From Mizuhopecten yessoensis (taxonomy: Eukaryota): a stretch of 64,000 bases of DNA. Below the pieces are notes generated by a model, which was given only the letters and a program-made list of their open reading frames with translations, did no database searches and had not been told where the DNA came from. The stretch spans positions 115,060 through 179,059 of the forward strand of contig NW_018408801.1 in the NCBI RefSeq assembly GCF_002113885.1. Direction: 5' to 3'. The position numbers and the translations under genes were made by a program. This document shows, piece after piece, positions 5,001 to 49,681 of this stretch; the first letter of the stretch is position 1, and each line of letters opens with the position of its first letter.

Positions 5001-5150
5001 AGAAAGGTAACTACCGCTTCCAATAGCTCTGTCGGTAATTACTTATTCCAATAAGTCAACATGTAACTGACCCCTCGAGAAAGGTAACTACTGCTTCCAA
5101 TAGCTCTGTCGGTTACTGCCTATTCCAATAAGGCAACATGTAACTGCCTC
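2021..5150. repeat. 77-bp satellite array, ~40 copies (81-bp variants)
   Basis: Unit attccaataaggcaacatgtaactgacccctcgagaaaggtaactacYgcttccaatagctctgtcggtaattactt; degenerate related sequence continues to ~5660. Confidence 0.97.
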
Positions 5151-25300: not shown

Positions 25301-28300
25301 ATTTTTCGACTTCATTCAAGTTGTATGTGTGTTTTTTGAAGTATATGTATATTTTGACATCATTTTAGTTGTACCGGTATTTGTGTATTTGACAGCAGAC
25401 AGTTTGTATGTGTGTATTTGGACAGCAGACAGTTTGTGTGTGTGTGTTTAGACATCACTTTAGTTGTATGTGTGTTTTTAGACCTCATTCAAATTGAAAA
25501 CTTCCGTAATCGTTGGTATCGACTGAGGAAGTTAATAAGATGAAGATGAAGAATGAAGAATGTGTGCTTGGACATCAATCAAGCTGTCTAATGTGTATTT
25601 GAACATGATTCAGTTTGAGTATATTTTTTGTCATCAATCAGACTGAATGTATGTATCTGGATATCAGTAAGATTGTTTATGTGTATTTGGACATTGGGCA
25701 AGTTGTATGTATGTGTTTGAATAGTAAACTTTATACACAAGGAAGTAGATTAGCTTGCTTAGGTTTCTACACTGTATTGTGTGCTTCTGCCTAATGTTTT
25801 CTAACTCTTGTTTCACACTTGAAACTTGAAATGTGTTTCCTCTTTTATATCTATAAGGGATATTTGAGTCAATGACTTCCTTATTCATTGAAGCATTATT
25901 TCTTGGTATAATGAACAGGAAATTTGTCATTAAGTAAAATTTGTAGATTGTAACTTTATATTATAGCAACTGCATGCATTTGTATAGATCTGATTTACCG
26001 ATAGCCAGATTTACTTTACAAAAAGATGTACCAGTCATTTTATAAATACAGTTTAAAAATAAACCTGTCATTAGTTCTCAGGTATAGTTACCAAGAGGTA
26101 TTTTGAACTTCCTCTGCCAGAAATTAAAATTAGAATGTAAAATATCTCATATATGACATTTTTGTTAAGAACTACAGTTGAATACTGCCAGCATTCCAGG
26201 TGTTTTGGGTATATCTGTTTTAGGCTCTAATTACACTGCCTGCCAAAATCTCCCGTGGTGAGGACGTTTTGGATTTCTTTGAAGTGGGACCTGAGGACAT
26301 TGTTCCAGCAAATGAAAAAACGCAGTAGGTGTCTAGGAGTATCCTACAGAGATTTAGATAGAAACATTATGAACAAAAAACTATGGATTCTTTTATCAAA
26401 CAATTTGGATATCGCTACACTCAGAGCATGTATGTAACATTTCTATTTTAAATCATTTTGAATGACATTTTTGTGATTGAACACAGAATACAGAGTTATG
26501 TTTCTTGCTTTACATAAATTTGCATATAAGGAAGTCTAAAAAAATCTATTTCAGATATTAAATCATACAAAGATTTTAGGCCACAAATACCTTTTCCATA
26601 TGTTTTAATCTGTATACATTAATATTAATTCTAAACTTGGTATTTTAAATTATAAATTAATTAATTTTATCTGTTGCATTGTATATCAAAGTGTTACGGG
26701 TGAGTTTTTTTTTACAATGATACCGGTTTTTAATTTTGTTTTATGCTTTATCGATTTAATCACATCTGACAAATATTATCTCTCTGGTAGCTACGGCTTG
26801 TTATTATTTCAATTTCTGTGTAATTTTCCTGTTCAATTTAGGATGGGTCATATACATTGTATGTCCTGAAAACTAACAGGTTTTTGGTGGACAGGAAATA
26901 AAACATCTGAAATGAAACGCTTTAAGTAGGACCGAGCCGTAAGCTGGCTTGCTGGCATGGATATGAAAGGCCAAGAATTAGTTATAGAATCAGCAAAAAG
27001 TGTTTTCAGATAGATTTGGTCAAATACAGCAGTTTCAGAAAACAATAACAGTTTTGAGCAAATTAAAGGTGTACCAGGGTAATTGCTATTTTTTGTAAAT
27101 GCCCCTGGACAGTTATAACTACAGAAATTTTGATTAATGAAGATTGGAAATAAGAAATAAACACTTAACCCTTTCACTATTGTAGACTGTAATGGACTCC
27201 TCCACATCAATACATGGTAGAGTCTTCTGAGTTACATAGGGTTGAAAGGGTTAATATGTAGATACATAGATGAAGGTGTATAACTTGAGAATGGACATAC
27301 TTTATCTGAATTTCTTTGGACTCAGGATGAAGACAAAGAATCGGAACATAGAGAAGATCTCCGGCCCAAAGCTTGCGGAGGAATATGTGGTGATTGGAGA
27401 TTACAGTAAGGAGGACAAATGGGACCTCAACCTAAAGGCTGGCATGGTGGTGGAGGTCGTGGAGAAAAGCGAAAGTGGTAAGTCAGGTCAAGGTCAGATA
27501 AAGTCTTTAAGACCATGGAGAGTTATCAAGGTCATACCTGCAAAGATAACACAGGTGATTACATAGTGGGATAGTTGTAACAAGGTCATAAAATTAACAT
27601 TAAATGTATCAGCATTAGATAACAGTTACAGTCAAACCTGCTCATGCCACCACTTCTACTCATGAGAGACCACATGTGTTAAGAGACCACTTAAGGAATG
27701 TTCCCCGTTGTAGTGATTTCTCTATGAATTATACCGATATTAAGAGACACCTATGTTAAGAGACACCTATGTTAAGAGACACCGATATTAAGAGACACCT
27801 ATGTTAAGAGACACCGATATTAAGAGACACCTATGTTAAGAGACACCTATATTAAGAGACACCTATGTTAAGAGATCGGTTTTTGGACTTCCAAAATATT
27901 GTCTTTTAATACAGGTTTGACTGTAACTTCTAATTAAAAAGCAAACTCATTGCGCGGAAGAAAATTTTAGGACTGTTTGCAGAAAAGCTGATCATATAAG
28001 ATATACATTAATGCTTTCTGATTTATCCTCACTTTTAAAGAAGACAACTTCCACTCCTTATGGTTACATATAGTACTGAGTTTAACTCCTTTGTTACTTA
28101 TAACGTTCTCAACATTAACCAGCTTCACAAAATAATTACATGTTAGTAAAATACTTAATTACTTGCTGACAGGTTTCGCCAGTTATGCCTTCTCAGTACC
28201 TACATTGGACCAGTGTTGGCTGTTCTCCCGTTTATTATACTAGTTTCTACACTTGGTTGTTTACATGTATGCCCCTCTTGACTTGCATTATATTACGTAT

Positions 28301-31300: not shown

Positions 31301-34300
31301 ATCAGATGAATAAATTAAAAAATGTACAAACCCTTGACAACTCTGTTTCGAACATCACAATGTTGAATGAAGAGGGGTGCAGTGAGCTTGCTAGCAGAAC
31401 AGCCTGCAGTGCTACACTCACAGAATCAGATTTGAATCAGTAAGGAATAGCGAATTACACTTAATTGTTTGATTGTTTGAACAGGTGAATTAGTCAAAGT
31501 GACATATTGAGAGCAGTTATACCCAGCACGACGTTGTCATGGTCATCTTTTCCTTTTGAATATTATTATTAAGTATGTCAAAACCCCAAGTTTATCTGAA
31601 GACACAGTATCAGAAAAAGTGCACTGCTGGTCTGAAAGACATACTAGTAACAGAAATACCTGCTTCCAATTAGCACTCATTAAGGTGGTATTCGGCTGAT
31701 TTTAATAAACAGTAAAAGGTTGTGTTGATAATGTAATCAGTATGTTGTGTCCTACAGGGTGTTAACATGTTCCATTGTTTGTGTTTTTTGACTGAAGTCC
31801 AAAACATTACACACTACATTAAAGGAACATTGACCATATACAATTTTTTGCAGATTGTTTTTAATTTTTAGGTTTAATGATTTACTTTTGTGATAATCTT
31901 AAATAAATATTCAATACTTTTCATTCAGATCCAACTTGATGTGGCGATAAAGGAGGCTAAATCACAGCGTTACATAACGATAGCAACCTTCAGTGATACA
32001 GTAGGGGACGGAATCAGCTTTGATAGGGGCCAGGAAGTCTTGGTAAATATAAGATATTACTGTTACATTATAATCTACAGTTGTGTGGAGTCTAATGTGA
32101 CATAGTATTGTTGTGTAAACTATTTCTGAATACACATATATATCACAGTTCTCAGACATAACATGGTTTGGTTTGTGATGTTTACACATCTATTTTCTTC
32201 ACTGGTACAATTGTATATATCATAAACGTAATACATGTAGATATATAACTTTTTTTTCTTACAGATTTCTGAGAAGACGGACGGTGGATGGTGGTTCGGA
32301 GAGATTAACGGTGTTAGTGGATGGATCCCCTCCTCTTATTTGGAGGAAATTACAAATGTAATTTATCTTTATTCTTGCTCCATCACAAATCTTGTTTATC
32401 CTTCCTTTGTCACAGATGTTTAACAGTTATTGTAGATCCTAACTCCATCATAAATGATTTTATTTATGCCTCCTCCATACAGAAATTCTGCACTCAATTA
32501 AATTGGAGACACTGGTATATATCCATAAGACTCATAACATCTATGATGAGTTTGTGGCTTATATACAAAAGTCTCAACCCAGGAGTCAAATTTCTTTCGG
32601 TTGAACCAAGGGTCTGCTGAGGTTAAGATTGTTTTGTCTTCATTACATAGTCATTTTTGATTAAGCATTTTTTTCCTTCTCTTATAAGCTCTTGTGAAAT
32701 AGGTCGCAATGTCAAAATGATGCTGTTATGTTACATGGGTAATAATAGTGCTGTACCCGGGCCATCCCAGGCCCCTCTGGCCGGGGCCTTCCCTGGCCTC
32801 TCTCCCTAGAGGCTCACATTCTCGAACCTCGAATCTACACTCCCACTCCTAACTCTTGACTCCAAACCCTATGTAATTATCCTGAAGTACTTTTAACAAT
32901 CTTTCCAGCATTAAATATTCATAAGTAGGATCTATATTATATATAAATAATGAGGCACGTGCAACAATTTAATCTAACTTCTAAGCTAACTTGTTTTTGG
33001 GAGCTCACACTCTCGTTCCTATCTCTATGCCATTCATGACTGACCTGGTCGCCACTAGATGGATAGCCCTTTAGCACCATTTACAATTCCACAGTCCCCC
33101 TTCAATTAATGCACTGTGTTATCCAAAACATAAGATTTGACGTCAAAGTACTTTTGACCAAAGTGCTGCTCTCTATTGATACCCACTGTCTTACAGGTTA
33201 TAAGATGGTTCCATTCTTCATCATTAATTATCAAATTTACGGCCAATTTTGTTACACATCGTTAACTTCATTTATCTCTAATATATACTGATGCAGCAAT
33301 GTTGATATTTCCAGGGCGACATTGAGGAAGAAGAAGACACTGTCTACCATGAGGTTCCAGAACCATCAGATGAAGAAGACAAGTCTGAATCAGAGGAAGA
33401 TGATTGGTACCAGGAGGTAACAGATGCAAGAAAGTCCAAACATGATGAAGATTATCTTGAACCAATGAAAAAAGCAGATTCTGAAACAATCAAGTTAAAG
33501 AAATCTCCAAACAAACCTAATACACCTCTGAGATCAGTGATTTCAGAGGACGATGATACTGATATAAAGGGATCTGTTTCACAGGCCCTGAAGACTAAAT
33601 TTGAGAAAGAGAAAACTGCAGTTAATCCCAGGCCGTTTACTCCTCCGAAAAACAACCGCAGGTTTAGTGGGAATCAGAATCAAGGTGATGGAGAATCATC
33701 ACACTTGGCAGATGTCCTTAAAGCTAAATTTGAAAAACGACAAAGTGCTGCTACTGAAGAGCGAAATCCTAAAGACAATAATAATGACACAACTTCTGCA
33801 ATTAAAAAGCAACCACTTTTGCCACCGGTTAAACCAAAAGTGAAGACTGGTTCTTCTCCAAGAGAAGACATTCAACCAAAGCCTAACGGAAAAGCATTGC
33901 CTTCTAAGACAACCCCACCGTCAAGACCATCAAAACCAGCGCTTCCCAAGAAGGAACCAGTTAAAACTGACGGCACCTCAGATTTTAAAAACGTGTTAGC
34001 AGCCAAATTTCAAGCCCGAACTAGTGGAATGGTATCAGATGAATCAAGTAATTCTACTCAACCTCCTCCTGTTTCAAAGAAACCTGCCGTTAAACATAAT
34101 GAAAATGACAAAGAGGATGTCAGTGGAAACGTTTCAACATCTGCTTTGAAATCTAAATTTGAAACGGATACTACAAAACCCACCCCAGTTCCACTGAAGC
34201 CCAAACCAAAAGGCCACGCTCAGACTGGCCCCCAGTTTAGAACATCCAAGCCATTTGTTCCAGAGAAGAAGATCCTTCCAAAGCCCGCAATGAAGCCCAA

Positions 34301-34535
34301 ACCAATTGTGTCTGCAAAACCCCCACCCCCGGTTTCCAAACCATACAAAGATAAAGGACAAGCAACCGTTAAATTTATAGCAACTGCAGACTTTTTTGCA
34401 GAAAACGACGGAGAGATATCATTCTATGCCGGTGATTCTATAATTGTTAAACAACAGCTTGATACAGGTTGGTGGCTTGTGTCCATTGATGGAAAGGAAG
34501 GCTGGGCACCGGAGTCTTATCTTCAGAAAACATAG
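15274..34535 (+). CDS. SH3PXD2A: SH3 and PX domain-containing protein 2 (Tks4/Tks5)-like scaffold / NOX organizer family: PX + 4 SH3, 12 exons, ~835 aa
   Basis: Exons 15274-15354, 17620-17700, 20394-20469, 24310-24386, 26224-26324, 27326-27477, 28309-28419, 29450-29567, 30243-30525, 31929-32042, 32265-32357, 33315-34535 join in frame (2508 nt). PX domain [22 protein letters not shown]...[11 protein letters not shown]...[25 protein letters not shown] closely resembles Tks5. Four SH3 domains with GWW...GWxPxxYL. The symbol denotes the family; it is probably a pro-ortholog of SH3PXD2A/B. Confidence 0.9.
15925..16670. mobile_element. Non-autonomous Helentron/HINE-like element with ~165-bp internal repeats
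   Basis: Palindromic ggtcactgtgacc (or variant) recurs at ~16071, 16238, 16404 and 16535, and catcaaac(t) motifs recur in the same units. Confidence 0.5.
17620..17700 (+). CDS. SH3PXD2A: SH3PXD2-like exon 2 (PX)
   Basis: [27 protein letters not shown]. Confidence 0.93.
19246..19301. repeat. (GT)n microsatellite
   Basis: About 27 GT units. Confidence 0.98.
19333..19930. mobile_element. HINE-like repeat remnant
   Basis: ttttatacaccc head; recurring gagttatggccctt and atgaagatt motifs. Confidence 0.4.
20394..20469 (+). CDS. SH3PXD2A: SH3PXD2-like exon 3 (PX)
   Basis: [25 protein letters not shown](G). Confidence 0.93.
21088..21530. repeat. Degenerate ~19-bp minisatellite (gggttattacctgtatac)
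   Basis: About 20 imperfect copies of the ttattacctgta core, with a ~73-bp higher-order duplication near the end. Confidence 0.8.
21800..22315. mobile_element. HINE-like repeat remnant
   Basis: Three copies of ttaagggctcggccaagtttgatgacc / ccccatttg; ends gcgggggatataaatt. Confidence 0.45.
23250..24110. repeat. Old degenerate AGGTCA-rich tandem repeat
   Basis: Many aggtcat/aggtcattgaa motifs at roughly regular spacing. Confidence 0.6.
24310..24386 (+). CDS. SH3PXD2A: SH3PXD2-like exon 4 (PX)
   Basis: [25 protein letters not shown]. Confidence 0.93.
24405..25720. repeat. 30-bp minisatellite (tttgacatccttttagttgtatgtgtgtat) in SH3PXD2-like intron 4
   Basis: Homogeneous core 24640-24960, a second subtype (tgtatttggacatcattcaggttgtttgtg) at 24990-25270, degenerate flanks. 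Confidence 0.92.
26224..26324 (+). CDS. SH3PXD2A: SH3PXD2-like exon 5 (PX end)
   Basis: [33 protein letters not shown]; GTAGGT donor, phase 2. Confidence 0.88.
27169..27250. mobile_element. 82-bp piggyBac-like MITE
   Basis: TTAA|CCCTTTCA...TGAAAGGG|TTAA: TTAA TSD and CCC/GGG termini. Confidence 0.65.
27326..27477 (+). CDS. SH3PXD2A: SH3PXD2-like exon 6 (SH3-1)
   Basis: [40 protein letters not shown](G). Confidence 0.92.
27629..27923. mobile_element. Tc1/mariner (pogo-like) MITE with an internal 16-bp tandem array
   Basis: TA|CAGTCAAACCTG...CAGGTTTGACTG|TA; internal ttaagagacacctatg about 9 times at 27737-27875. Confidence 0.8.
28309..28419 (+). CDS. SH3PXD2A: SH3PXD2-like exon 7 (SH3-1 end)
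   Basis: [21 protein letters not shown]. Confidence 0.92.
29450..29567 (+). CDS. SH3PXD2A: SH3PXD2-like exon 8 (SH3-2)
   Basis: [38 protein letters not shown](R). Confidence 0.92.
30243..30525 (+). CDS. SH3PXD2A: SH3PXD2-like exon 9 (SH3-2 end and linker)
   Basis: [13 protein letters not shown]...[11 protein letters not shown] then GTAAGT. Confidence 0.92.
31929..32042 (+). CDS. SH3PXD2A: SH3PXD2-like exon 10 (SH3-3)
   Basis: [38 protein letters not shown]. Confidence 0.9.
32265..32357 (+). CDS. SH3PXD2A: SH3PXD2-like exon 11 (SH3-3 end)
   Basis: [31 protein letters not shown]. Confidence 0.92.
33315..34535 (+). CDS. SH3PXD2A: SH3PXD2-like last exon (acidic Tyr region, Pro-rich region, SH3-4)
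   Basis: CAG acceptor at 33312-33314, in frame with ORF 33465..34535; ends [21 protein letters not shown]...[22 protein letters not shown]. Confidence 0.92.
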   Translation, partial: GDIEEEEDTVYHEVPEPSDEEDKSESEEDDWYQEVTDARKSKHDEDYLEPMKKADSETIKLKKSPNKPNTPLRSVISEDDDTDIKGSVSQALKTKFEKEKTAVNPRPFTPPKNNRRFSGNQNQGDGESSHLADVLKAKFEKRQSAATEERNPKDNNNDTTSAIKKQPLLPPVKPKVKTGSSPREDIQPKPNGKALPSKTTPPSRPSKPALPKKEPVKTDGTSDFKNVLAAKFQARTSGMVSDESSNSTQPPPVSKKPAVKHNENDKEDVSGNVSTSALKSKFETDTTKPTPVPLKPKPKGHAQTGPQFRTSKPFVPEKKILPKPAMKPKPIVSAKPPPPVSKPYKDKGQATVKFIATADFFAENDGEISFYAGDSIIVKQQLDTGWWLVSIDGKEGWAPESYLQKT

Positions 34536-35655: not shown

Positions 35656-36871
35656 GAACCATTTAATATTAGCATACATTAATACAGGTTCAAACACTTA
35701 TTCAAACAATGACTCCTGATACTGGAATCATTCGTTTGGGAACTTGTTTTTGTGGGGATATACAATACGTGTCCTGCATTAGGATGATGTCAACGTGTCA
35801 ATAGTCTGTACTATCCTTCAAGGATAAAGAACCGTTACGATATATATTTATCATACAGTTTGCTGTATGAAATTATCCAAGTTTATATTTGTCATACGCT
35901 CTGATACCAAGTTATATGGTCTGCTCGAATCGGGTGTCTGTCCGTCTGCCTGTTGACACAAGTTCGACCGGAATACTTCTTCGAAAGTACTTCATAGATG
36001 TCAATGAGATTGTATGCACTTACTAAGTATGCAAAGTAGTTTTTACTGTGCAATGCATTTTCATTTATCCTGTATCTTGTTTTGCAGTGTTAATTAACAT
36101 GTGCCTTACAGTTTTTAGCTTGTATACAAAGTAACGTTTGGGTTGAAATTGATACGAAATAACTGCGTCAATGGAAACTGCAAACATTATACAACTGTGC
36201 CTTCTTGTCAACGGAGGAGCAGTGTGTCCTTGTAGTAAAATCATGTACCAGAGTCATTTGTTGTATATTGTAAACACGTAATGCCGAGAAGAGACATTGT
36301 TGCGAAAATCCGTTATGAGCAAGCTACAATAGAATAGTAATCTTCGGGAAAAACCCTTTTAATTGCTACTGGTAATGCACATATTAATCGTATCACTGCA
36401 TGAACGAGTTTTTATATCATCTTGTTAACCGAAAGGCATTAATTTTTAAAGGTTTTATAATTTTAAAGGTTGGAAGTGCATGTTACAGAATACTAAATAT
36501 ATCATACCTTGTTTTATACGTTGTAATAGTTGCATAGATGTAAGTATTGCTGATGATCTTTGTATATGTAATTTCTTTTCCATATACATTAATTTGAATA
36601 TTAAATTTTATGTTATTTAGCGAGGTTAATTTTTATTTGAAATGCATATTTCTTCCACTGTATCATAAACATGTATTAACAATGCTTTGTTACATTTCTC
36701 GTCAGTTCTGTACACAATATGTTACATTTTTTACTTAACCAATTTTATATTAATTATACATGTATATATCACCTGTTATGAAGCATTTTGGCAATTCTGA
36801 TCTAGGCTTTTAAAAATGTGAATGTCAATGTATTTACGTGTAACGAGTTAAGTGACAGATCGGTAGGTAAT

Positions 36872-37122
36872 GGGCCGGTATTCATGAAACCGTTCTCATA
36901 CTCAAACTTAGATTGTGTACTCATGCCCAATTTCCTTATCCGGTGATAAATGTTTAATATTTCACATTTTTATAATTATTTGGAAGAATTCTGGGAGACC
37001 TGAAGCAGAATACTGTTTTCAGAGTTTACACCAGATTTTTGTACTGATTTAAGCGAGTTACAGGAATGTTTGAACACAGAATACATGCTTGAGTATGAGA
37101 ATGGTTTCATCAATACAGGCCC
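36872..37122. mobile_element. PIF/Harbinger (ISL2EU-like) MITE
   Basis: ~34-bp TIRs gggccggtattcatgaaaccgttctcatactcaa / ttgagtatgagaatggtttcatcaatacaggccc, flanked by AT on both sides. Confidence 0.7.
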
Positions 37123-38017
37123 ATGTGCTTGCTTGTTTCCCGACTGGTACCGAGTACTCGTTACACATGTTTTACTATAACGTGTATAGGTCAATATTTG
37201 TGCTCGGTACATGTGCTGGGTAATGTTTTACTACAACATGTACATGTTGATGTTTGTGCCCGGCACATGTTCTGCGTCAGGTTTGTTCTATAACGTGTTC
37301 CTGAAATGTGATTGCTAGTCCTGTATGACATGAAACTTTCGCGGTGTTTACTTTCGAAGTTACAACGGAACCACAAATATGACTAGTACAGCGATTAGGT
37401 TGACAATTTACCTGATTTAAACTCAAATGTAACGACAGTAAACGAACATGTGTAGTAATGAAATTATGCTTACAAATAAAGTACCCCGAATATTTCCTGT
37501 TATACAGTATTAGAATTTGATTGGATACAAACTATTTTTTTATATAAGAAAAAAATGTTTATAATTAAACTATTATATTTAAAATTTCTACTTTTTGCTT
37601 TGTTTTTGTTCAGGACTTATGTGTTAATATGTCTTTAAAATACGGTAGATGGTAAGTACGTTTTTGAATGATCTGTTGGATATTCAGCTGATAAAGATAA
37701 CTTCGTGAGGATGTCTTTCTTGGTAACACGATGACTCCGGTCACATCTTACAATCTTGTTTGATGTGAATCCAATCTCTACACGATGGTTACACCGAGCG
37801 ATTTTTCAGCTCGTCCTTTGCCATCGTGGATACGAATTAGTTTCGAACTCGTTTGATCGCTTTTTTCGCGACTTTTTTGACCCCAGAAAAAGGAAGCGTG
37901 AAGAAAAACTGAAATCACTATTGTAGTTAATGTACGTAAACATTAATATATTAAGCACACGTTTATATTGATATAGCAACTACATGTATTCCGACATTCT
38001 TTAAGTGTAAGGGTACA

Positions 38018-39074
38018 TCAAAAGGTACAGTATCTTCGGACACACAATGGATAATTCCGGCGTGGAAATCTTTGACACAAGGAACACAGGGTATCTAACA
38101 GCAGAGGGGATATTTCTGATGGGTACGTTCCAGAGCGGTTTCCTGAAAAATACACACACACAGAAAGATGGCATTAGTATGTTTATTATATTTTAGACAG
38201 GGTTTCAGAGAAACAATGACCATAAGTCAACTGTTAGAACATTGAACAACAACTTCTATATTTAAGCGATGGTTTCAGGGAATCAACGACCTAATTTAAC
38301 TAAAAGAACATTGTACATCTACCTTGTGTGATCTATTTACTATTAAGTAGTGAACACTGAGTGTTAAGCCGTTAAGTAGGACACGCTATTCACCTCGTTG
38401 TGGATGATGTTGAATATAATTTCAGCAAGTTATTGAGCCGTTCTCCGTATTAATGTAACTTACGACACCCAAACTCATATTTTTATATAGCGAAATTTAT
38501 CAAGACAAAGTATCTAAAATTGTCAAGCACTAGCCTACCCTATTTGTTTAAGTATAGAGAATGGCCTTAGATTATCACATAAAACACAGATATAGACCAC
38601 TTACCGAGACATCTACTTAAAACTGAGTTATCGAGCACAACCTATGAGTTAACAAGTACGGAGTATTACATGAGAAAGGCATGATTAAGCACTTGTGTAG
38701 CTCGAAGAGACGCATATATTTGAAGCTGTCTTCGTTATTATTTTTCCAACGTTTTCGTTAAATATTCTACCGTAATATATACATGTTCACGCTTAAACGT
38801 TGATTATCTCTTGATTATTTTACGGTGAAGTTTGATGCATCATTATAAACTTCAGCGATGTATGATTTATGTAGATCAATAGCGACACAATATTACCTGT
38901 GTTCCCTGACCGCCTGTTCACTAGTGGCCACCGTGCTCCGATCCTGTTGTCAGCCCAGAAATTACCAAAAGGTCTGGTCTGGCCCTGCCACCGTTCTCTT
39001 CCGTATCCACTCGAGGTCACGTGGTATGTCATCACAAGTACGACTATACCGACACACAGACATCGTAAATCCAT
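38018..39074 (-). CDS. Orphan 100-aa secreted, Arg-rich, four-cysteine peptide precursor (two exons: 38897-39074 and 38018-38142)
   Basis: Spliced product MDLRCLCVGIVVLVMTYHVTSS|GYGRERWQGQTRPFGNFWADNRIGARWPLVNRRSGNTGNRSGTYPSEISPLLLDTLCSLCQRFPRRNYPLCVRRYCTF*. Signal-peptide-like N-terminus; phase-1 intron with GTAATA donor and TTTTTCAG acceptor; both exons are GC-richer than flanks; TATA-like tract ~95 bp upstream of the ATG. Confidence 0.72.
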
Positions 39075-39083
39075 TCCAAACTG

Positions 39084-39462
39084 TGACGTCTGCAAACCAG
39101 CAAACTTCAATGTTCAAATCCGTTACGTCAGGAAATCGCCAAATGTTAGTTTAACGAGATGTGAAAAATATATATATATATAAGAGTGCACTTAGGCTGG
39201 ACTGTATTTATCAAATTTGCTTTTTGCATATTCTAAACACATTGCCGCTAGCTGCTTTCGTATAACAATTCGAGGATATCAATGACAGACTGTCCACATT
39301 GCATCGGTAACAGTAAGCAAGAGCAATATTTTTTCTTAATTGCAATTAGTGATCTCACAATGATTTACTGCGCACTTCATGAAATCAATATGACAAATGC
39401 ATCGGACGGTGTTCCTTTTGACTGTGCAAGAGTACGTGTGTAGGGTGTAGACCCTGACGTCA
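39084..39462 (-). promoter_or_regulatory. Candidate promoter of the peptide gene: TATA-like tract and CRE/ATF sites
   Basis: TA tract at 39169-39182; TTACGTCA at 39123-39130; TGACGTC at 39084-39090; perfect TGACGTCA at 39455-39462. Confidence 0.4.
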
Positions 39463-41384
39463 CGGTATAAAATTGGACAGGCCAGACAGATTAATTTTAA
39501 GCCCACAGGCACACATTAACGTACCTGTCATTTTAATTGACGCGTATACATATAGTCTACACAAAGACACGTTCTACAACAGTTTTCTTTTCGTTTTATA
39601 TTGGATATTTTTTTCATATATGTCAATGAGTTTCAAGAAACATGAATTATTTTTCTTTTCGTGACAAAACAGTTTACAGAAACATGGATTTGTTTCCTTT
39701 TTGTCACAAAATTTACAGAAACATGAATAAAGTAATGCTTGATAACTTATGTAGCAATTTTATCTAAAATCATCTTTCTTAGGAAGTTTTTTATGGAAAG
39801 CATGACAGCAAAACAAGACAACATCATCCATTACTTTGGATATTAAAAGCGATGATCAATCACGTGCATTTTTAACAGGAGTTATAATTGTCTACAGACC
39901 CTACCGTACCGACAATTACTGGTGAGGCAGGCAATGATTGTGAGAGCGCTTTGTTATCTGGTGAGTCACTGTCGGTAGCCATGTTAAATCATCATAATCA
40001 CATTCTTAGTGTGCAGGTTAGTTATTAACATCCTAAAACAAAATAAGTCTAGACTAATGTTAATTTTTATACTCTCAGTTTTATTTATAATTTCTCCGTC
40101 TTCAAGCCAAAATCGTGCATTTTGTTACATAATCATCTATTCCCTCAAAAACCGCAGTACCACAAATTAAATTTCTTATTATTTAGCATTTGTGTAACAC
40201 CTCAGGTTGATAACAAATAAATACATGAATCACTATAAAAATATACCTATTCGAATGATCAATTATTGAAAAAGGAAAACAAACAAATACTGAAGTGTTT
40301 ATAAACTCTTCACAATGTCTTAAACAATACTCTTGAATAAACATAAATAATTACATGCAAGCAGAGAATGAACCAAGCGGAATTAATCAATTTACTTACA
40401 CATATTATGCAGCAGTATGCGGATATATTTTGAAATTATACTACATCGTTCATCAAGCATGATTATAAAATTATCTATCATGTTATAAAATAGAATTTAG
40501 ATATCACATTCAGAGAGTAATCAACAGTAATATCGATATTTATATCATCTCGCTCCAAATCTGACTGGATATGTTCATTTCTTATCTGCTAATAATTAAT
40601 GTCAACCTTTCAATGTTGCTGATGTGTGCGAATAATCACTATGAAGCAGCCACTTATAATGAGCATCATTGTGTAGCGATTGCGTTCGATTTGTATTCAT
40701 AAAAATTCTTAAACAATAATGGTCAAAACAGACATTATTAAATAGAAGTTCCATAACATATTTATTAGTAATACAAAGCAAGGTAACACAGACTGTATTT
40801 AATCAATGCGGAAATCCAAAGTAAGCATTTACCTCATCATATGGTCATTTAATCCGTTAAAGACACATAAGTGGTACTCAAAATCAAAATTATGGAAATC
40901 CGTGTCCAAAGTGATCAAAAATATACTTAAAATTACGAGAAAAACATAAAAGTGCCTTTAAAATAATAACAAGTAAAAAATTACTACTTTTCGCTGCAAA
41001 CTGTGCAAGAATATATTTAAGCCACAAGGTAACAATCCAATGTTGTTACCAGCCCTCTTTTCAATGTGTTTTTAACACAACTGTTCATAATCTTTGGCTC
41101 ATACCAGTATGTGGCAATAACTTTAACCTACCTGTATATAGCAGAATGATAATATAATACCAAGTATGTGGCAATAACTTTAACCTACCTGTATATAGCA
41201 CCTGTCATAGACATCTTGTTTAACGAAAATAGATAATTAAAAAAATCATATAGTACTATCTAACATCAATTATAATAAAACATTATTTGATTGTGATTCT
41301 ATGTAATATAAATCATAAAAATTGTATCACATGTACCCATAACTATTTCAAAATATAATTTATAACAGTGTTATATGTCCAGAG

Positions 41385-41607
41385 TTATTTTGATTTCACA
41401 GAAATCATTTCAATGGTCTTTCGTAACATTTCTTCCCAGTTATCCTCTTTTTTCATTTCCTGTGATTTTGTTTCTTTTGTGAGAAGTGACGCAACCTCGG
41501 CGTTGTCGACGGGCGTTAGTCCAGCAGAAATAACAGCTTCCTGGAACTTCTTCACAGAAGCGGTTGCTATGATTACCCTGGGAGGGCGCCTGTCTGTGTT
41601 TTGTTTA
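41385..41607 (-). CDS. THNSL2: THNSL2 last exon
   Basis: [21 protein letters not shown]...[21 protein letters not shown]. Confidence 0.92.
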
Positions 41608-44600
41608 CTAAAGGACAAGAAAGAAATATGTACTTTTGACGTGTAGCGCATGACAGTTATAGCACATAAATAAATACATATTTTTGCAAGGAAAAAGGAT
41701 TTTGCCTTATTCCTGCCAAACTTTGACCATATTTTTGTCAAAAAAAAAAAATCATCATTGTAAAACACGGCGAATAAACGATTTCCGGTTTAGAAGGGGA
41801 TATTTCGTTAGGGATGATTTAAAATCGTTTATAGGTATCAAATTCCGGTAATGTAGGGATAACCATACCTGTCCAGGTCCCGGTAGTGGTATGCCACGCC
41901 TATCGCTGTATGTGGGCACACGTGGTACTGGTCCTTCTCAAACGTCCGGCGCATTGTCTGTCTCACTACGTCGTCATTGGCGACAAATGTCTCGACAATG
42001 ATTTCTTTGGTCTAGAACAAAACAGAGAAAGCATTCTTTAATATCCTAATTTTCCATCATAAAACAACTATTGTACTGTACACAAGTTATAGTTTGTTCA
42101 TCATTCAAATGTACGGTCATATTAAGTATAATTATGACGTATTTCGCAGCAATCCTAAACAACGCCAGATTGAGCTGCGTTTATGGTTGCAGTATACCAT
42201 GTATTCAAATATAGTGATATGATTCAAATGTTAACGTTTTAGTTACTTGTTTACTAGGTAATGAAAACATTGTTATTATACAATATAACTTGTTTACTAC
42301 ATAATATAAACGTTGTTATTATACAATATAACTTGTTTACTAGGTAATGAAAACATTGTTATTATACATTATAACTTGTTTACAAGGTAATGAAAACATT
42401 GTTATTATACAATATAACTTGTTTACTAGGTAATGAAAACATACAATATAACTTGTTTACTAGGTAATGAAAACATTGTTATTTTACAATATAACTCGTT
42501 TACTAGGTAATGAAAACATTGTTATTATACAATATAACTTGTTTACTAGGTAATGAAAACATTGTTATTATACAATATAACTTGTTTACTAGGTAATGAA
42601 AACATTGTTATTATACAATATTGCTTGTTTACTAGGTAATGAAAACATTGTTAATATACAATATAACTTGTTTACTACATAACCTTGTTTACTAGGTTAT
42701 GAAAACATTGTTATTATACAATATAACGTGTTAACTATGTAATGAAAACAATTATTATACAATATAACTTGTTTACTAGGTAATGAAAACATTGTTATTA
42801 TACAATATAACTTGTTTACAACATAATATAAACGTTGTTATTATACAATATAACTTGTTTACTAGGTAATGAAAACATTGGAAATATACAATATAACTTG
42901 TTTACTACGTAATGAAAACATTGTTATTATACAATATAACTTGTTTACAACATAATATAAACGTTGTTATTATACAATATAACTTGATTACTATTTACTG
43001 AAAACGTTGTTAATATACAATATAACTTGTTTACTACATAATATAAACGTTGTTATTATACAATATAACTTGTTTACAATGTAATGAAAACATTGTTATT
43101 ATACAATATTGCTTGTTTACTAGGTAATGAAAACATTGTTATTATACAATATACTATGTAATGAAAAAAAAACTCACATTGCATAATTGGAAAAGCACCC
43201 CTTTCACTGAATAAAAAGCACCAATTGTAAAAAAAAATCCATATTAGATTATTAAATTGTCATGAAAAATGAGAACACTTTGCAGGGCATGATAAAGCAT
43301 CCTAAATACAATTAAAACAAAAAACAAGAAAACAAAAAAAAAACGTTTTATTTATGTTCTACGTCCTACATTTGATCAATACAGTACATGTTTATTTGTA
43401 ACATACGAACCGTTAGTCACGCTATTGAAGATTTTCCTTTGTATCTTGTATAACTCTCCTAAGTAACATGTTTGTACACGAGTGTAAATGTATATGTCTA
43501 TGTACAAGATTTATCATGCCATGAACAAATATAAAACATAATTTCTACAATGCCTTGCTGTGTTGCTCTTATTTTTATACCTGTCACCTAGTGACAATTA
43601 ATGGGACAGGTATGGGTATCTAAACAACGTCATTATGAGTGTTAACTCCGTAGGGTCTGTTGTCTATCAAATGTCACACATCTGCACCAGACTTAATACA
43701 CATCTGCACCAGACTTAATAAATTTACCGACTTTTCCAACTGAACTTTCCTCGTCTGGTCGGTAAATAATGACAAGAAGTTGATTTAGGGGGCATGCAAT
43801 GTGTGTATAGGAACAGAGTCAGGATTTAAAACTACAGTTCAAGCTAAGAACAACTGAATAGGTACCAGCACATTTGCTCACAAACAAGAAACACAACGTG
43901 AGAATGAAGATAAACCCGAAAATGCTTATTATCGTAGAAGGAGGATGTTTCGAAGAGTGCATTTACATGTTAACAATAGGAAAGGTACATGTGTATTGAG
44001 GTCAACATTTTGCTCAATATGGGTTGTTTAAAGTAACTTTGATTCATTGTAGAGTTGGGAGCTAGGTTCGCCTACATATACTAAATATTTATTTTTACCT
44101 TTTCAACGATGTCAGTCGGCAGCTGAACCTTTCCCGTGCTTTCAAATTCGTCCATCAATGCCTTGATACGCGGTGCGTTACCGCCTGTCACCATGTACCA
44201 GATCCTCTCCATATTGTAGGGTACCTTACACAATTCAAAACAGCCATTATTTACCACCATGTACCAGATCTTCTTCATATTGTAGGGTACCTAACACAGT
44301 ACAATACACCCATTACCACCATGACCATATCTTCTACATACTGTAGGGTACCTTACAAAAGTAAAATCGTCATAATGGTAAGCAATTACTACGAGGCGCT
44401 TTACTTTAGTTTAAACAGTATTTTATTCAATATATGGCAGTGACAAAATAATACAAAATCAACAAAGAGGATTCGAAAACAAGTACATAATAGTACTTAT
44501 ATTAATTCGTCTCCTTATTAATAAACCTGGTAGTAGGACGGCACTGTTACATATATTTTGATAGTATAACAGACAAAGAGAAGAAGAAGAAATCAGGGGG

Positions 44601-47600
44601 GAGGGAGGAAGGGGTGCATCAGGAAATGAAAGAAAGTGGTTATGAAGAGAATAACGAGAAGAAATGCATTGCTTAATTGAATCTGGTTGGAATGTGATTC
44701 ATGAAAAGGTAACCCTAATGAGCGTTATATAAGGATGCATTAAATACATTGGACATCTCTAAATTGCTTTACGTTGATTCCAATCAAAAAGTATACTGAT
44801 ATCCTGCAAAATGCAAGAGTGTTGTAGTCTATATTAATTCAGGCATCAGGCTCTAGATCCTTTCCATATTGACGGGTACCGAAAACAAATGACATCTTCA
44901 TGATGATATCTAAGTAATACTTCCAGTCATTATGTTCTAGATCATGTCCATACTGTTGGGTTCATAATACAAAATAAAGTCGTTATAATGATAGATAATT
45001 AATATGTGGGGCGTTACCTCCGGTCCCCATGCTCCAGATACTCTCCATATTCTAGGGTACCCAAAACAATACAATAAAAACCCGTTTATAATACCTTACT
45101 AATACAATCTTGTTAGGTACTTGGATTTTCTTCAAACTTTGAATTCATTGCAGTCCTTAATACGATTTTAAGTTGATATGGATACGAACTTTACATTCTT
45201 GCACTTGTTTGATCTGACGAAGCTGCAATTATTTTGTTAGATTTGGAACTTGTAAAGGCTGAATTTGAATGTGATAAAATGGACACAAAACTTCAATCGA
45301 AATATTGGTTGTTGTGTTTTTATATTTTGCTACTGATTTTCATAAAACCCAACACCTTAATCGGCAGCGAAGCTTCTTAACCTATAGCTATGTGTTGATG
45401 GATTGACGCAAGACATACATGTTATTGCGCCTGTTAAAGTTGCTATGCTAAAATATGAAGTGCACTGCTTCATACAGCTGCTTCGTCCTTCTAAGACTTA
45501 TAGATGATGCCTCTGTGAAACCATCCAGTACCCACCACTACAGTGCCTATTTTGGCTTTGATATAAACAGTTTCTCGGTCGTCTTTGCTATGTCATCTGT
45601 TCCAAAGCAAATTATAGTTTTGTCCACCTTTTTCCTATTTCGAATTAATCGAGCATGCTACATTGTATGTGCTATCGGAGATTTCTTCAAATGCCGCTCC
45701 AGATATTGATGTACATACAATGTTTTTGTTTTGAAGCTCAATGTGTTTGCAGCTGGAATGACCCGATGTTAGGCATTTATTTGCTTCTTGGAGGGATTCT
45801 TCGTCTTGCGATTCTTTGTTTTCGTTGTTGCTCCAAGCTGTCTCACGCTGGCCCTCTTTGATTGCTGCAGCATATTGTCCATAGATTTCACTGTCAGATT
45901 CTTTTACAGTCTCTTTGCAAATGACCACTTTCACCACAGTAGTAACATTGTCTTTCGTATTTATCACAATCACGGATCAAATATGGTTGCTAGACTGGCA
46001 CCTACTACAATGTCTTGCACTTGACGAAGAGAATTTGTTTGGACATCTGTAATAAGGATGACTTATTTCTCTACTCCTAAACCATTTGGTTCTGTTGTTA
46101 TCAGCAAATATTCTAACTTGGAATCTGCCAAAACATGTTAGACCACACTGTCGGTCATTTAGTAGGGAATGTCTTTGATTTTTATATTTGTAACAGTTTT
46201 TCCCGTTTTAAATACTTTTATTGACTGGACTTTTTGTTCTATTCCATCTACTGTAAGAGTTAATTTTTGTCACATGGTACGCAGTTGCAACAATCACATG
46301 GTTTCAGTGATCTGGGCCAACCTTTTCTTTCTGAAACACTTCCTCCAATCCTATTACAACTTATTCGTTGTTGATCCCTCACAGAAATCTGTGATTGAAA
46401 TGGAGAGACATAGGTCTCTGTAACTGTTGGGACATCAATTTCGAACGCGGGGAGTAGAACTCAGTTGGTTAGAGAAGTGATCGTCTCTTAGTCTCTCTAG
46501 GAAAAAACTGTAATTCCAGAAAATTTACACTTTCCAAAGCATTGGAAATGTTATGGTTACGTTCGCAATTGAAAAGGATGGAACATAAGGGCGAATATTG
46601 GACACACACGGTCGATTTAAAAAGCAAATCAGAGTCTCGACAAATTACCAACATCGTCGATAAAGGGTAGACCACTCAACTATGTGGAAATTCAATACTC
46701 TTACCTAATATGTTGGGTTATGGTTTGGGTGACAGTATGTCATACCCTCAGAAAAGGAAACATCACTTTAACACAAGCTGGCAAAGATGTGAAATCAGAT
46801 GTGCAAAACTTTGGGGTGTAACTGACTCATGTATGACACTTTTAGATTGGTACCATGGACATTTTATTTTTCTCGACTACTCCGTCAGTTACGGTCAATC
46901 GTAACCTTGAACTATAAATTAATTCAAAGTTACCTGTATGTCCATGGCCGTGGCAAGCGTCTGTGTGACGGTGTCTGCCATGGAGTAGTCCCCATTCCTC
47001 ACGGTTCTGTCGACAATATCATTGGTAGTTACGGCACACACCAGTCGTAGGGGAACGCCCATCAGTCGAGCCAGACAGCCCGCTATGTGTGCATACAAAA
47101 CATTTACTTTGAGTTAACAACATCATATCAATTACGACATGGGAAAAGAATCAATTAAGTTTTAAAAAAAATCAGTACATGCAAAATAATGTTGCATTAT
47201 ATATCAATACATATAATATTTTTCGTTTCTATATGACAAGACAATTAACACAGACAAATACCACACCAAGCTTCTGAATAAAACTATAAGTACAAAAGTT
47301 AAGACGATTTTATATTAATTTGCTTTAAAGCAATTGCTACACAACTAACAGACATTAAGACAAGGATTTCCATTTGTTTTATCGTAGGAATCAATGGACG
47401 AAACGGGCACATGTTACAAAACACATTTACTTTGTTCGGTTTTCTGTATTTACTGTTTATCGTATTTTAATCGTTTCCTTACTTCCGTATTTCTAGTGTT
47501 TATTTAAGCACAAACCATACTATTACCACAGGCATCCACATCCGTACGAATACTTTGATAAGGAGTGTATAAAGGCAAACAATGTATGTTACATGTATAT

Positions 47601-49681
47601 AGTATCACTAAATATAGACGGTTTATAATCAAATTGTCAAGTGACTATTTACATATACTCACATGTAACGTTTCCGCACGCACCCGTCGGAATGACAATT
47701 TCTACCTCACCATCACAACTTGGGCACATCTTTGGTGAACATACAGTATAACAAACAAATCGTTATTCGTGTAATGACAGGGTACATCTGAGGTAACAAC
47801 GTATATAATACGTATACTTATCGTACTGGGTTCGTACACTATCTGACAATTATTCTAAGGGGTAACTAGAGCAAGGCTGATGTACTTAAATTTAAAACAA
47901 ACAAAAAGCTAAATTACATTTTGCCACTTCTAAACGACTACATTGATTATATCAACTTTTGATTATTTGACTTTAAACACCATTTGGGTAAGTATGAATG
48001 AAGCAAATTTGAAAACTGGTGCTGGAACGGTTGGTCCAAAATTTACAGCAGCACAATTTAAATATGATAAAGACTCCCTCAAAATCGCAACATACTTATA
48101 TATAGTTAGCATAAGTCACGAATACATCCATGCTACTAAAATTGATCCCCGAATACAGCCCCACCATCGAGGACTTATTCCAATGGTCAAGACAAGGAAA
48201 CCACTGGGATCCCATCCCTATAACCCATACAAAAATTGCCATGTATGAAGAAATGAATACTTTCATTCTAACAGGATTTGCCCTGCCTCTGGAGGACTGA
48301 CTTAGCCCCCGAGTCATAACATACGATTGAGCAGAAATTATTTACACAACCATGCTTCTAGAAGTAGCGCAGAGGTCTGACCCCACCCTTAGGGGATTTA
48401 GAGCCCATAAAGAAGTGTTGTTATGCAATAAGTGTGAAACCCACCTGTAGATAAGAGTAAATGTAGTGAGCCGTCTGTACCATGACACGAGCCCAGTTTA
48501 TAGAATTGATGGAGGTTAGATTGTGTTGGCGCTTGAATGGAATGTCCATGAACACTTTTTTAATAGGAAGGTCGAGGTCATCTGATGATCCTTCTACCCG
48601 GAACACGTGGACATTGTCCTCCATAACAGAGGTCATTTGGTGTTCTTGGACACGAGAACATCGTCCCTTCGGTAGTAATACAACAATGTCTACCCATTTC
48701 AAACCACGTATCGCTTCAATGGCAGCACTTCCGGTGTCACCAGATGTTCCTAGAAACGTTAAAAATATAAACAGTCATATCAAGTTTAAAAACTATAATT
48801 ATACCTGCATAAAACTTATTACTAGTAGCATATTTACCGTGAATTAATACCTGATTATGATAATAATGTTTGCCTTTGTATCGCCAATACAATATACTGT
48901 AACGGATATTGCTAATGGATAAAACTTAATCTCAGGATGAGAGCCTTAGGAGCTACAATATTCCATCTAGGTAAGAAAAAGAAAAATCAGTTATATAGGG
49001 TACCTGGATCTGAACACAGTAGCCCAGTGCGCTACCACATCAAAAAATGTCATTATAACTTATTTCTTGCGAACACATAATATATCAAACAGACTTACCA
49101 ACAATGATTGTCAGGTGTTTCTGTCGTTTATTAAGAAAGTATTCCAGAAACTGTCCCACACACGACAGCGCAAGGTCTTTGAAAGCCCACGTGACGCCGT
49201 GGAAGAGTTCTATAATGTTTAGACCATCGTTAAGCTTCGATATGGGTGTGACGTCCGGATGGGTGAAACGGCCGAATGCTTTGTCCAATAAACCTGGATG
49301 AATAGTAAAACAAAAATAACCAACAGTGTAGCAAATTCAAGCGTACTGTCCAAGTCTGCATATTCATCATCACAAAGTGCGCCGTGGTCATTTGAGGAAA
49401 AATACCTGAATTATTTTAGAAAATGTGACTTCTGTGAGATAACGCTAAAACAACGTACCGTTCAGTTCGTCCTTTGGAATCTCGTCCTCTCCCACAAACA
49501 ACGGTACGATTTCTTTAACTAGCCCCACGTAAGACAGCTTGGACCACGATTTCAGAGTGTCTGTGGTGATGGTTGGAATTGTCTCCGGAAGTATAATTCC
49601 ACCATCTTCAGCATATCCGGTATACAGGGCCTCCTCAAATGTAAGACCGGTGACACCACCTCTTGTACTACAGTATCGCAT
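41385..49681 (-). CDS. THNSL2: Threonine synthase-like 2 (PLP-dependent, fold type II), 8 exons, ~476 aa
   Basis: Exons 49459-49681, 49099-49293, 48445-48749, 47663-47729, 46934-47082, 44099-44224, 41869-42011, 41385-41607 join in frame (1431 nt). Motifs [20 protein letters not shown] (PLP Lys), [52 protein letters not shown]. Kozak context GCCACCACCATG. No N-terminal kinase-like domain, unlike THNSL1. Confidence 0.94.
41869..42011 (-). CDS. THNSL2: THNSL2 exon 7
   Basis: [43 protein letters not shown]. Confidence 0.92.
42243..43168. repeat. 43-bp minisatellite, ~21 copies, in THNSL2 intron 6
   Basis: Unit acttgtttactaggtaatgaaaacattgttattatacaatata, interspersed with a variant (acataatataaacgttg). 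Confidence 0.95.
44099..44224 (-). CDS. THNSL2: THNSL2 exon 6
   Basis: [42 protein letters not shown]. Confidence 0.9.
44400..44700 (-). mobile_element. Probable LINE 3'-UTR fragment
   Basis: Minus strand is pyrimidine-rich and ends ...gaataaaatactgtttaaactaaagtaaa. Confidence 0.35.
45100..46600 (-). mobile_element. Decayed non-LTR retrotransposon ORF1 (gag-like, Tx1/L1-type) in THNSL2 intron 5
   Basis: Two CCHC knuckles: [14 protein letters not shown] (45966-46009, frameshifted) and [14 protein letters not shown] (45906-45947); upstream [16 protein letters not shown] segment; multiple stops. Ends are approximate. Confidence 0.65.
46934..47082 (-). CDS. THNSL2: THNSL2 exon 5
   Basis: [49 protein letters not shown]. 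Confidence 0.93.
47663..47729 (-). CDS. THNSL2: THNSL2 exon 4
   Basis: [22 protein letters not shown]; AAG acceptor, GTGAGT donor. Confidence 0.88.
48445..48749 (-). CDS. THNSL2: THNSL2 exon 3
   Basis: [12 protein letters not shown]...[21 protein letters not shown]. Confidence 0.94.
49099..49293 (-). CDS. THNSL2: THNSL2 exon 2
   Basis: Contains [22 protein letters not shown]. Confidence 0.94.
49459..49681 (-). CDS. THNSL2: THNSL2 exon 1
   Basis: [33 protein letters not shown]... Confidence 0.94.

What the first reader, a model, noticed from the sequence alone, without database searches (positions are those of the whole stretch)
38018..39074. Hidden two-exon gene for an orphan secreted, cationic, four-cysteine peptide (candidate new antimicrobial peptide or neuropeptide family)
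Seen: the ORF track shows only exon 1 reading into the intron. Splicing 38897 (G|GTAATA) to 38142 (TTTTTCAG|GA) gives a clean 100-aa precursor. It has a ~22-aa hydrophobic leader, a Gly/Arg/Trp-rich linear part (GYGRERWQGQTRPFGNFWADNRIGARWPLVNRR), and a terminal module C-x2-C-x10-C-x4-C-TF. The 78-aa mature region has 13 Arg, no Lys and 4 acidic residues (net about +9), with a dibasic RR that could be a convertase site. Knowledge: the mollusc AMP families I know (defensins, big defensins, mytilins, myticins, macins) have 6 or more Cys, and myticalins are linear, so this spacing fits none of them. Inference: a two-disulfide helical-hairpin peptide acting in defence, signalling, or shell/byssus matrix.
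Basis: partly seen in the sequence, partly recalled or inferred. Interest (0 to 1): 0.85.

Follow-up and report, generated by a model that had tools for sequence, protein, structure and literature searches.

The report
Orphan secreted cationic scallop peptide gene
This is a real, spliced scallop gene for a small secreted, positively charged peptide with no detectable relatives; it is laid out like a defence-peptide precursor, but its function is untested.

Summary
The 754-nt GT-AG intron (38896-38143, minus strand) is removed in RNA from two studies, and the exons give a 100-aa reading frame: signal-like leader, Arg/Gly/Trp-rich stretch, dibasic RR, and a C-x2-C-x10-C-x4-C end. The genome is the Yesso scallop. 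The gene is not hidden: GenBank holds it as hypothetical KP79_PYT17113. That model adds 31 N-terminal residues, 26 of them from an exon with no RNA cover in four runs, which buries the leader. Exon-by-exon searches found no relative in sequence, family or structure libraries, and it is not among 63 catalogued scallop neuropeptides. Closest in layout are mussel myticalins (signal, cationic linear peptide, dibasic site, phase-1 intron), but its tail is cationic and has four cysteines instead of being anionic, so membership fails. Best reading: a lineage-restricted host-defence peptide precursor (0.45); rivals are signalling peptide, matrix or gamete peptide, and non-coding or young gene. Conservation in other scallops and tissue expression could not be tested. 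The scan noted other orphan cationic peptide genes elsewhere in this genome; the near look-up showed no other note on this gene.

The parts
39075..39405 (-). 5' untranslated region as covered by the one RNA contig; holds six short upstream ATG frames, so it may include a retained 5'UTR intron (donor-like GTGAG at 39358, AG at 39091-39090) or the true start may lie nearer the (TA)n run at about 39180
   Evidence: the intron is a candidate only, no RNA joint seen
39455..39462 (.). CRE palindrome TGACGTCA about 50 nt upstream of the contig start; the stretch 39075-39575 has the highest TGACG density in the window
   Evidence: post hoc, function not tested
39123..39140 (-). kappaB-like 10-mer (1 mismatch) directly followed by an ATF/CRE-like TGACGTAA
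   Evidence: weak: 15 such kappaB-like matches in the window
38897..39074 (-). coding exon 1: start ATG in good context, signal-like leader (residues 1-21/22), cationic linear region (23-53), RR (54-55), first residues of the C-terminal part
   Evidence: GC 0.525 against 0.337 in the intron
39009..39074 (-). signal-peptide-like leader
   Evidence: hydropathy; cleavage after Ser21 or Ser22 inferred from the -3/-1 rule, no predictor run
38916..39008 (-). predicted linear peptide, residues 23-53: 31 aa, pI 11.4, 16% Arg, 16% Gly, 10% Trp, net +3, mostly unstructured
   Evidence: release by convertase is inferred
38143..38896 (-). phase-1 GT-AG intron, 754 nt
38018..38142 (-). coding exon 2: N-glycosylation sequon at residue 61, Pro/Ser linker, helix-loop-helix with four Cys (C79, C82, C93, C98), stop
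37928..38017 (-). 3' untranslated region to the end of the X5 contig, with AATATA variants at 37969 and 37952; an X14 contig suggests a longer form to 37550
39905..39982 (-). extra first exon of the GenBank model (26 codons); no RNA cover in the four runs laid, probably a prediction error

Best explanation
A lineage-restricted precursor of secreted host-defence peptides. Shown: the gene is transcribed and spliced and has an open 100-codon frame. Inferred: the leader is cut after Ser21 or Ser22; a PC1/PC2-type convertase cuts after Arg54-Arg55 and carboxypeptidase E trims the pair, releasing (1) a 31-residue linear Arg/Gly/Trp peptide, not amidated because no Gly precedes the RR, and (2) a 45-residue piece whose last 22 residues (net +5) fold as two short antiparallel helices closed by two disulfides, most likely nested (C79-C98, C82-C93). 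Either piece, or the uncut 78-residue chain (net +9), would bind anionic microbial surfaces through Arg and insert through Trp, Tyr and Leu. Expression is probably limited to some tissues or conditions.
For: The linear region meets the stated myticalin mature-peptide criteria of 23-42 aa, pI above 11 and Arg above 10%. The exon layout is as in myticalin genes: signal, mature peptide, dibasic site and a few residues on one exon, then a phase-1 intron. A linear Arg-rich part plus a four-Cys tail is the arasin layout. The same terminal Cys pattern with a longer loop occurs in the annelid antimicrobial peptide perinerin. No homologue was found, as expected for fast-evolving defence peptides. It is absent from the scallop ganglia neuropeptide list. 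Expression is patchy: seen in X5 and X19, no cover of the exons in X24.
Against: No activity, tissue or infection data. The linear piece is only +3, hydrophilic (mean hydropathy -1.14) and weakly amphipathic (moment 0.16), which is poor for killing in seawater salt. It is single-copy in the window, whereas myticalins are multigenic. Expression was low in every run laid. The RR site lacks a furin-type Arg at P4. A phase-1 intron and a dibasic site are common in secreted-peptide genes of any function (own knowledge).
Confidence: 0.45

Rival explanations
1. A signalling peptide (neuropeptide, hormone or cytokine-like factor): the disulfide-closed helical end is a receptor ligand released from the precursor at RR.
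For: Signal plus dibasic site plus C-terminal Cys module is a prohormone layout; CRE-rich upstream region; low expression. Molluscs have several species-restricted Cys-rich precursors filed as neuropeptides, such as oyster CCCGS.
Against: Not among the 63 precursors from scallop ganglia. No amidation signal and no repeated peptide. Receptor ligands are usually traceable in other bivalves (own knowledge), and none was found. No Pfam hormone family matched up to E 10.
Confidence: 0.2
2. A structural or reproductive secretion (byssus, shell or periostracum matrix, mucus, egg coat or sperm protein), where the Arg/Gly/Trp stretch gives cation-pi cohesion and the Cys module cross-links or caps it.
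For: Composition rich in Arg, Gly, Trp and Asn recalls small mussel foot proteins (own knowledge); such proteins evolve fast and are often orphans; an N-glycosylation sequon sits at residue 61.
Against: Only one Tyr in the linear part, no repeats, and low depth in all four runs, whereas matrix proteins are usually abundant in their tissue. The tissues of the runs are not known.
Confidence: 0.17
3. Not a selected protein gene: a spliced non-coding RNA, a very young gene, or a read-through tail of the upstream same-strand THNSL2-type gene, with a chance frame.
For: No homologue at all. The only database record is one GenBank prediction, with no RefSeq protein among the cluster's sources. Six upstream ATGs lie in the contig-covered 5' region. 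THNSL2 3' cover reaches 40075, only 670 nt from the contig start, at similar depth in X5. The one coding variant seen (38960) changes an amino acid, Phe39 to Ile.
Against: A frame of 100 or more codons across the junction with a signal-like start arose in 3 of 5000 shuffles. GC rises inside the coding parts. Of the three phases of exon 2, the one joined in frame carries the four Cys. X19 shows the peptide exons without THNSL2 3' cover and X24 the reverse (few reads). No Rfam match of note.
Confidence: 0.13

Closest known systems
Myticalins and modiocalins (Mytilus, Modiolus; PMC5577615)
   Same: Signal peptide, then a 23-42 aa linear peptide with pI above 11 and over 10% Arg, then a dibasic site, then a C-terminal extension; signal, mature peptide, dibasic site and first extension residues on one exon, followed by a phase-1 intron.
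   Different: The extension is cationic (pI 9.25) with four Cys instead of Asp/Glu-rich; RR not KR; no amidation Gly; the leader does not fit the family consensus; little Pro; single copy; myticalins are reported as restricted to Mytiloida although the Yesso scallop genome was screened.
Arasin-1 / callinectin (crustaceans; PMC11767717)
   Same: Linear Arg-rich N-terminal region followed by a C-terminal region with four Cys.
   Different: The linear part is Gly/Trp-rich with 6% Pro, not Pro/Arg-rich; a dibasic site and a linker separate the two parts; the Cys module is predicted helical; no sequence match.
Perinerin (Perinereis aibuhitensis; PMC6780910)
   Same: Arg-rich, four Cys, pattern C-x2-C...C-x4-C with two residues after the last Cys.
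   Different: Loop of 10 residues against 27; no other likeness by eye; perinerin's precursor and structure are not described in that review.
Cysteine-stabilised alpha/alpha hairpins (kappa-hefutoxin, plant alpha-hairpinins, framework XIV conotoxins; from own knowledge)
   Same: Two short helices joined by a loop and two disulfides.
   Different: Those have C-x3-C...C-x3-C (or other) spacing; here x2 and x4. Fold searches gave no specific match (Foldseek none, VIA best Z 3.2; one vicilin-buried peptide at Z 2.8 among unrelated rows).
Eclosion hormone / CHH-ITP-type peptides (PMC8398477)
   Same: A C-x2-C followed later by a Pro-Leu-Cys recalls the middle of insect eclosion hormone (resemblance from memory).
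   Different: These have six Cys in three disulfides; here four, and no Pfam match.

Membership tests
Myticalin/modiocalin | Central linear peptide of 23-42 aa, pI above 11, Arg above 10% | tested here: met
   31 aa, pI 11.42, 16% Arg against criteria
Myticalin/modiocalin | Signal, mature peptide, dibasic site and first extension residues on one exon, then a phase-1 intron | tested here: met
Myticalin/modiocalin | Anionic, Asp/Glu-rich C-terminal extension | tested here: not met
   exon 2 net +4, pI 9.25, four Cys
Myticalin/modiocalin | Conserved signal-peptide consensus and Lys-Arg site | tested here: not met
   leader differs from the consensus quoted (read by eye); the site is RR; no myticalin in the exon-1 search
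Myticalin/modiocalin | Intron in the 5'UTR just before the ATG | tested here: inconclusive
   candidate AG 15 nt before the ATG and a donor-like site at 39358, but the one RNA contig reads through
Myticalin/modiocalin | Antibacterial activity of the mature peptide | not testable with these tools
   needs synthesis and MIC assays
Arasin/callinectin | Pro/Arg-rich N-terminal domain | tested here: not met
   6% Pro, 16% Arg, 16% Gly; definition
Arasin/callinectin | C-terminal region with four Cys | tested here: met
   spacing not compared with a tool-held arasin sequence
Perinerin | Four-Cys spacing C-x2-C-x27-C-x4-C | tested here: not met
   end spacings equal, loop 10 against 27; no hit
CS-alpha/alpha hairpin peptides | Helix-loop-helix fold | tested here: met
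   single-sequence model, helices 12-24 and 30-37, mean pLDDT 75.6, pTM 0.45; moderate confidence
CS-alpha/alpha hairpin peptides | C-x3-C in each helix | tested here: not met
   x2 and x4; the definition is from own knowledge
CS-alpha/alpha hairpin peptides | Nested C1-C4, C2-C3 disulfides | not testable with these tools
   model coordinates not available; needs disulfide mapping
Eclosion hormone / CHH-ITP | Six Cys, three disulfides | tested here: not met
   four Cys; no Pfam match to E 10
Catalogued Yesso scallop neuropeptide precursors (PMC5996578) | Listed among the 63 ganglia precursors | tested here: not met
   gene number 17113 absent from Table S1 and two short motifs absent from the supplements; some listed precursors have no gene number, and only the second half of Figure S1 was read
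Mollusc defensins, big defensins, mytilins, myticins, macins | Six or more Cys in family arrays | tested here: not met
   four Cys in the mature region; no Pfam or PDB sequence match; the family arrays are from own knowledge

The most novel reading that the evidence does not exclude
The first member of an undescribed scallop peptide family: a two-product precursor with a myticalin-like gene layout in which the anionic pro-piece is replaced by a cationic, two-disulfide helical hairpin, so that one gene yields both a linear and a disulfide-stabilised antimicrobial peptide, overlooked because the public gene model buries its signal peptide.
Probability: 0.25. Interest if true: 0.6.

Novelty: new variant of a known kind. 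Interest (0 to 1): 0.35.

Why it matters
Scallop antimicrobial peptides are little catalogued, and this 22-residue, two-disulfide core has a cysteine spacing that matched no molluscan family in the libraries and reviews checked. It is short enough to synthesise, so the defence reading is cheap to test. The public model probably starts 31 residues too early, so secretome and peptide screens built on it would miss the gene. Orphan secreted cationic peptides are common in bivalves, so without activity or conservation data a specialist would be interested but not surprised.

Tried and rejected
Sequence searches, exon by exon: exon 1 and exon 2 found only the gene's own GenBank record. phmmer of exon 2 over 1.84 billion representatives added three long repetitive proteins, P0002-P0004, whose scores come from summed repeats and which are not relatives. 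Pfam to E 10, PDB sequences, ESM Atlas features for both exons (19, 56), Foldseek, atlas shapes (35) and VIA wide (44) gave nothing specific. Metagenome contigs: nothing for either exon (67, 72); two earlier tries failed on the 48-residue minimum (62, 63) and viral contigs were not rescanned. Synteny: the last protein search went to the neighbouring SH3 exon to reach other scallop contigs; it returned only contigs of 1.6 and 2.0 kb, too short, so conservation is untested. Papers: no mention of the gene or its accessions. Rejected leads: luqin (W..RPFG near the N-terminus and C-x10-C, but the scallop luqin gene is PY_T04739 and there is no amidation signal); PFGx8amide (PFG-x8-G occurs, but Gly is followed by Ala); GRWRN/Vamide (another gene, PY_T21394); clionin (different Cys pattern); insulin-like (B-chain-like L-x-x-T-L-x-x-x-C, but no CG start, no CC and the core is too short; own knowledge); the two plus-strand ORFs over exon 1 (no Pfam match, and the splice ends fit only the minus strand). 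The kappaB-like site is weak evidence.

Full report
Observation. On the minus strand an ATG at 39074 opens 59 codons and one base up to a GT donor at 38896; an AG acceptor at 38143 is followed by two bases that complete a Gly codon, 40 more codons and a stop at 38020-38018. The junction is real: a 724-nt contig of run X5 (recorded as probably RNA) covers 39405-38896 and 38141-37928 and skips 754 nt with CT..AC ends, and two raw reads of the RNA-seq run X19, from another study, show the same joint, though from one start. Nine further runs hold 0.25-0.31 of the words of 37900-39200, about what exons alone would give (my arithmetic: 0.36 at most). Of these only X14 was laid, and it covered exon 2 and the 3' end but not exon 1, so the others are compatible with splicing but unchecked. 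Depth is low throughout, and the polyA run X24 has no cover on the exons.

Is it coding? Shuffling each RNA-supported exon on its own gave a frame of at least 100 codons across the junction in 40 of 5000 trials, and with a signal-like start in 3 of 5000; shuffling only the coding parts left the frame open in 22 of 5000. GC is 0.525 and 0.458 in the coding parts against 0.337 in the intron and 0.36 and 0.29 in the flanks. This favours a protein gene, but conservation, the decisive test, could not be run.

Identity. The exon-1 search hit one protein, P0001, hypothetical KP79_PYT17113 of Mizuhopecten yessoensis (OWF40334.1, A0A210PV45), a cluster of one. It contains both coding exons plus 31 N-terminal residues; 26 of them come from an exon at 39982-39905 that has no cover in any of the four runs, and the X5 contig reads straight through the acceptor it would use. 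The 100-aa form begins at an ATG with G at -3 and +4 and puts the hydrophobic stretch (peak 3.4, residues 6-14) at the N-terminus, so the public model probably starts too early. The gene lies between a threonine-synthase-like gene (476 aa, same strand, upstream) and a PX-SH3 Tks-type gene (835 aa, tail to tail). No paralogue is in the window.

Relatives. None. Exon 2 found only P0001 by word search and, by full phmmer over 1.84 billion representatives, three repetitive proteins that are not kin. Pfam, PDB sequences, the ESM Atlas and metagenome contigs were blank. These blanks have limits: a 40-residue query needs high identity to score, and small genes are often left out of annotations. A single-sequence model of exon 2 shows helices at 12-24 and 30-37 (pLDDT 75.6, pTM 0.45); the linear part is mostly unstructured (pLDDT 59.8). 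Fold searches gave only generic helix pairs.

How it most likely works. Shown: transcription, splicing, open frame, composition. Inferred: secretion, a cut after Ser21 or Ser22, a convertase cut after Arg54-Arg55, and two products. One is a 31-residue linear peptide (pI 11.4, 16% Arg, 16% Gly, 10% Trp, net +3). The other is a 45-residue piece ending in a 22-residue core (net +5) that would close as a helical hairpin with two disulfides, nested pairing being the natural fit to antiparallel helices but untested. Both would bind anionic microbial surfaces. I give this host-defence reading 0.45. Against it, the linear piece is hydrophilic and weakly amphipathic (moment 0.16), and the gene is single and lowly expressed in the runs seen. 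A signalling role (0.2) fits the prohormone layout and the CRE-rich upstream region (five TGACG matches in 39075-39575, the window's highest, with the palindrome counted twice), but the gene is not among the 63 ganglia precursors of PMC5996578 and has no amidation signal. A matrix or gamete role (0.17) fits the composition but not the low depth. A non-coding, young or read-through origin (0.13) is weakened by the shuffles and by X19 and X24 showing the peptide exons and THNSL2 3' cover in opposite patterns, on few reads.

Comparison. Myticalins (PMC5577615) are the closest in layout: signal, 23-42 aa linear peptide with pI above 11 and over 10% Arg, dibasic site and first extension residues on one exon, then a phase-1 intron. 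This gene meets those points but fails the anionic extension, the signal consensus and the KR site, and myticalins are reported only from Mytiloida although this genome was screened; so it may work like one but is not filed as one, and the shared layout may be convergent. Arasins share a linear Arg-rich part plus four Cys (PMC11767717) but are Pro-rich. Perinerin shares the end spacings C-x2-C and C-x4-C-x2 with a 27-residue loop (PMC6780910). Eclosion-hormone-type peptides need six Cys (PMC8398477). Species-restricted Cys-rich secreted peptides of unknown role are already known in bivalves, such as oyster CCCGS.

Limits set by the operators. P0001 was used only as a length anchor with exon-2 residues scored, for two exact look-ups, and its first 31 residues were mapped to the window. 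The locus fetched is this genome's GenBank contig over about 28018-49983 and does not reach the single N at 14197, which was left as it is.

Verdict. A real, expressed, GenBank-predicted but probably mis-started orphan gene for a secreted cationic four-cysteine peptide. It is a new variant of a known kind: a cysteine spacing and cationic tail not matched to any family checked, on a familiar precursor plan. Interest 0.35; 0.6 if activity and a scallop-wide family are shown.

Noticed in passing
window 39905-39982 (-): First exon of GenBank model KP79_PYT17113 lacks RNA cover in four runs; the 31 added residues push the signal-like leader away from the N-terminus.
   Followed up: partly
window 38960: A-to-T variant on the + strand in X5 and X19, changing Phe39 to Ile in the linear peptide.
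   Followed up: no
window 36870-37124 (+): In the long 3' region of the Tks-type gene, 54-nt inverted arms (81% complementary, 147 nt apart) match a very high-copy repeat (summed depth in the thousands at 36895); an X14 contig skips 169 nt between the arms with non-splice ends, probably a template switch at the hairpin. Looks like a small non-autonomous transposon.
   Followed up: partly
window 58105-59086: Foldback element with 470-nt arms, 96% complementary, 42 nt apart; each arm carries a GGGACTTTCC and a GGGAATTTGC, which explains a cluster of four kappaB-like sites.
   Followed up: partly
window 33465-34535 (+) and upstream: Last exon of a PX plus multi-SH3 (Tks/SH3PXD2-type) gene, 835 aa in GenBank, with RNA cover to about 37490, ending tail to tail with the peptide gene.
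   Followed up: partly
window 41385-49681 (-): Threonine-synthase-like gene (476 aa; Thr_synth_N, PALP, THR4_C), with 3' RNA cover down to about 40075.
   Followed up: partly
window 6848-8183 (-): Exon with a CFAP58 coiled-coil match at 7794-8183 (Pfam E 5e-43); the neighbouring frame at 6848-7249 may belong to the same gene.
   Followed up: no
window 54997-56103 (+): 368-aa reverse-transcriptase frame (RVT_1), likely a retroelement fragment.
   Followed up: no
window 2012-5146: 77-bp satellite, 40 copies at 95% match; further arrays of 30 bp at 24411-25339 and 43 bp at 42245-43153.
   Followed up: no
window 38858-39183 (+): Two antisense frames of 98 and 94 codons overlap exon 1; no Pfam match, probably a by-product of the high GC.
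   Followed up: yes
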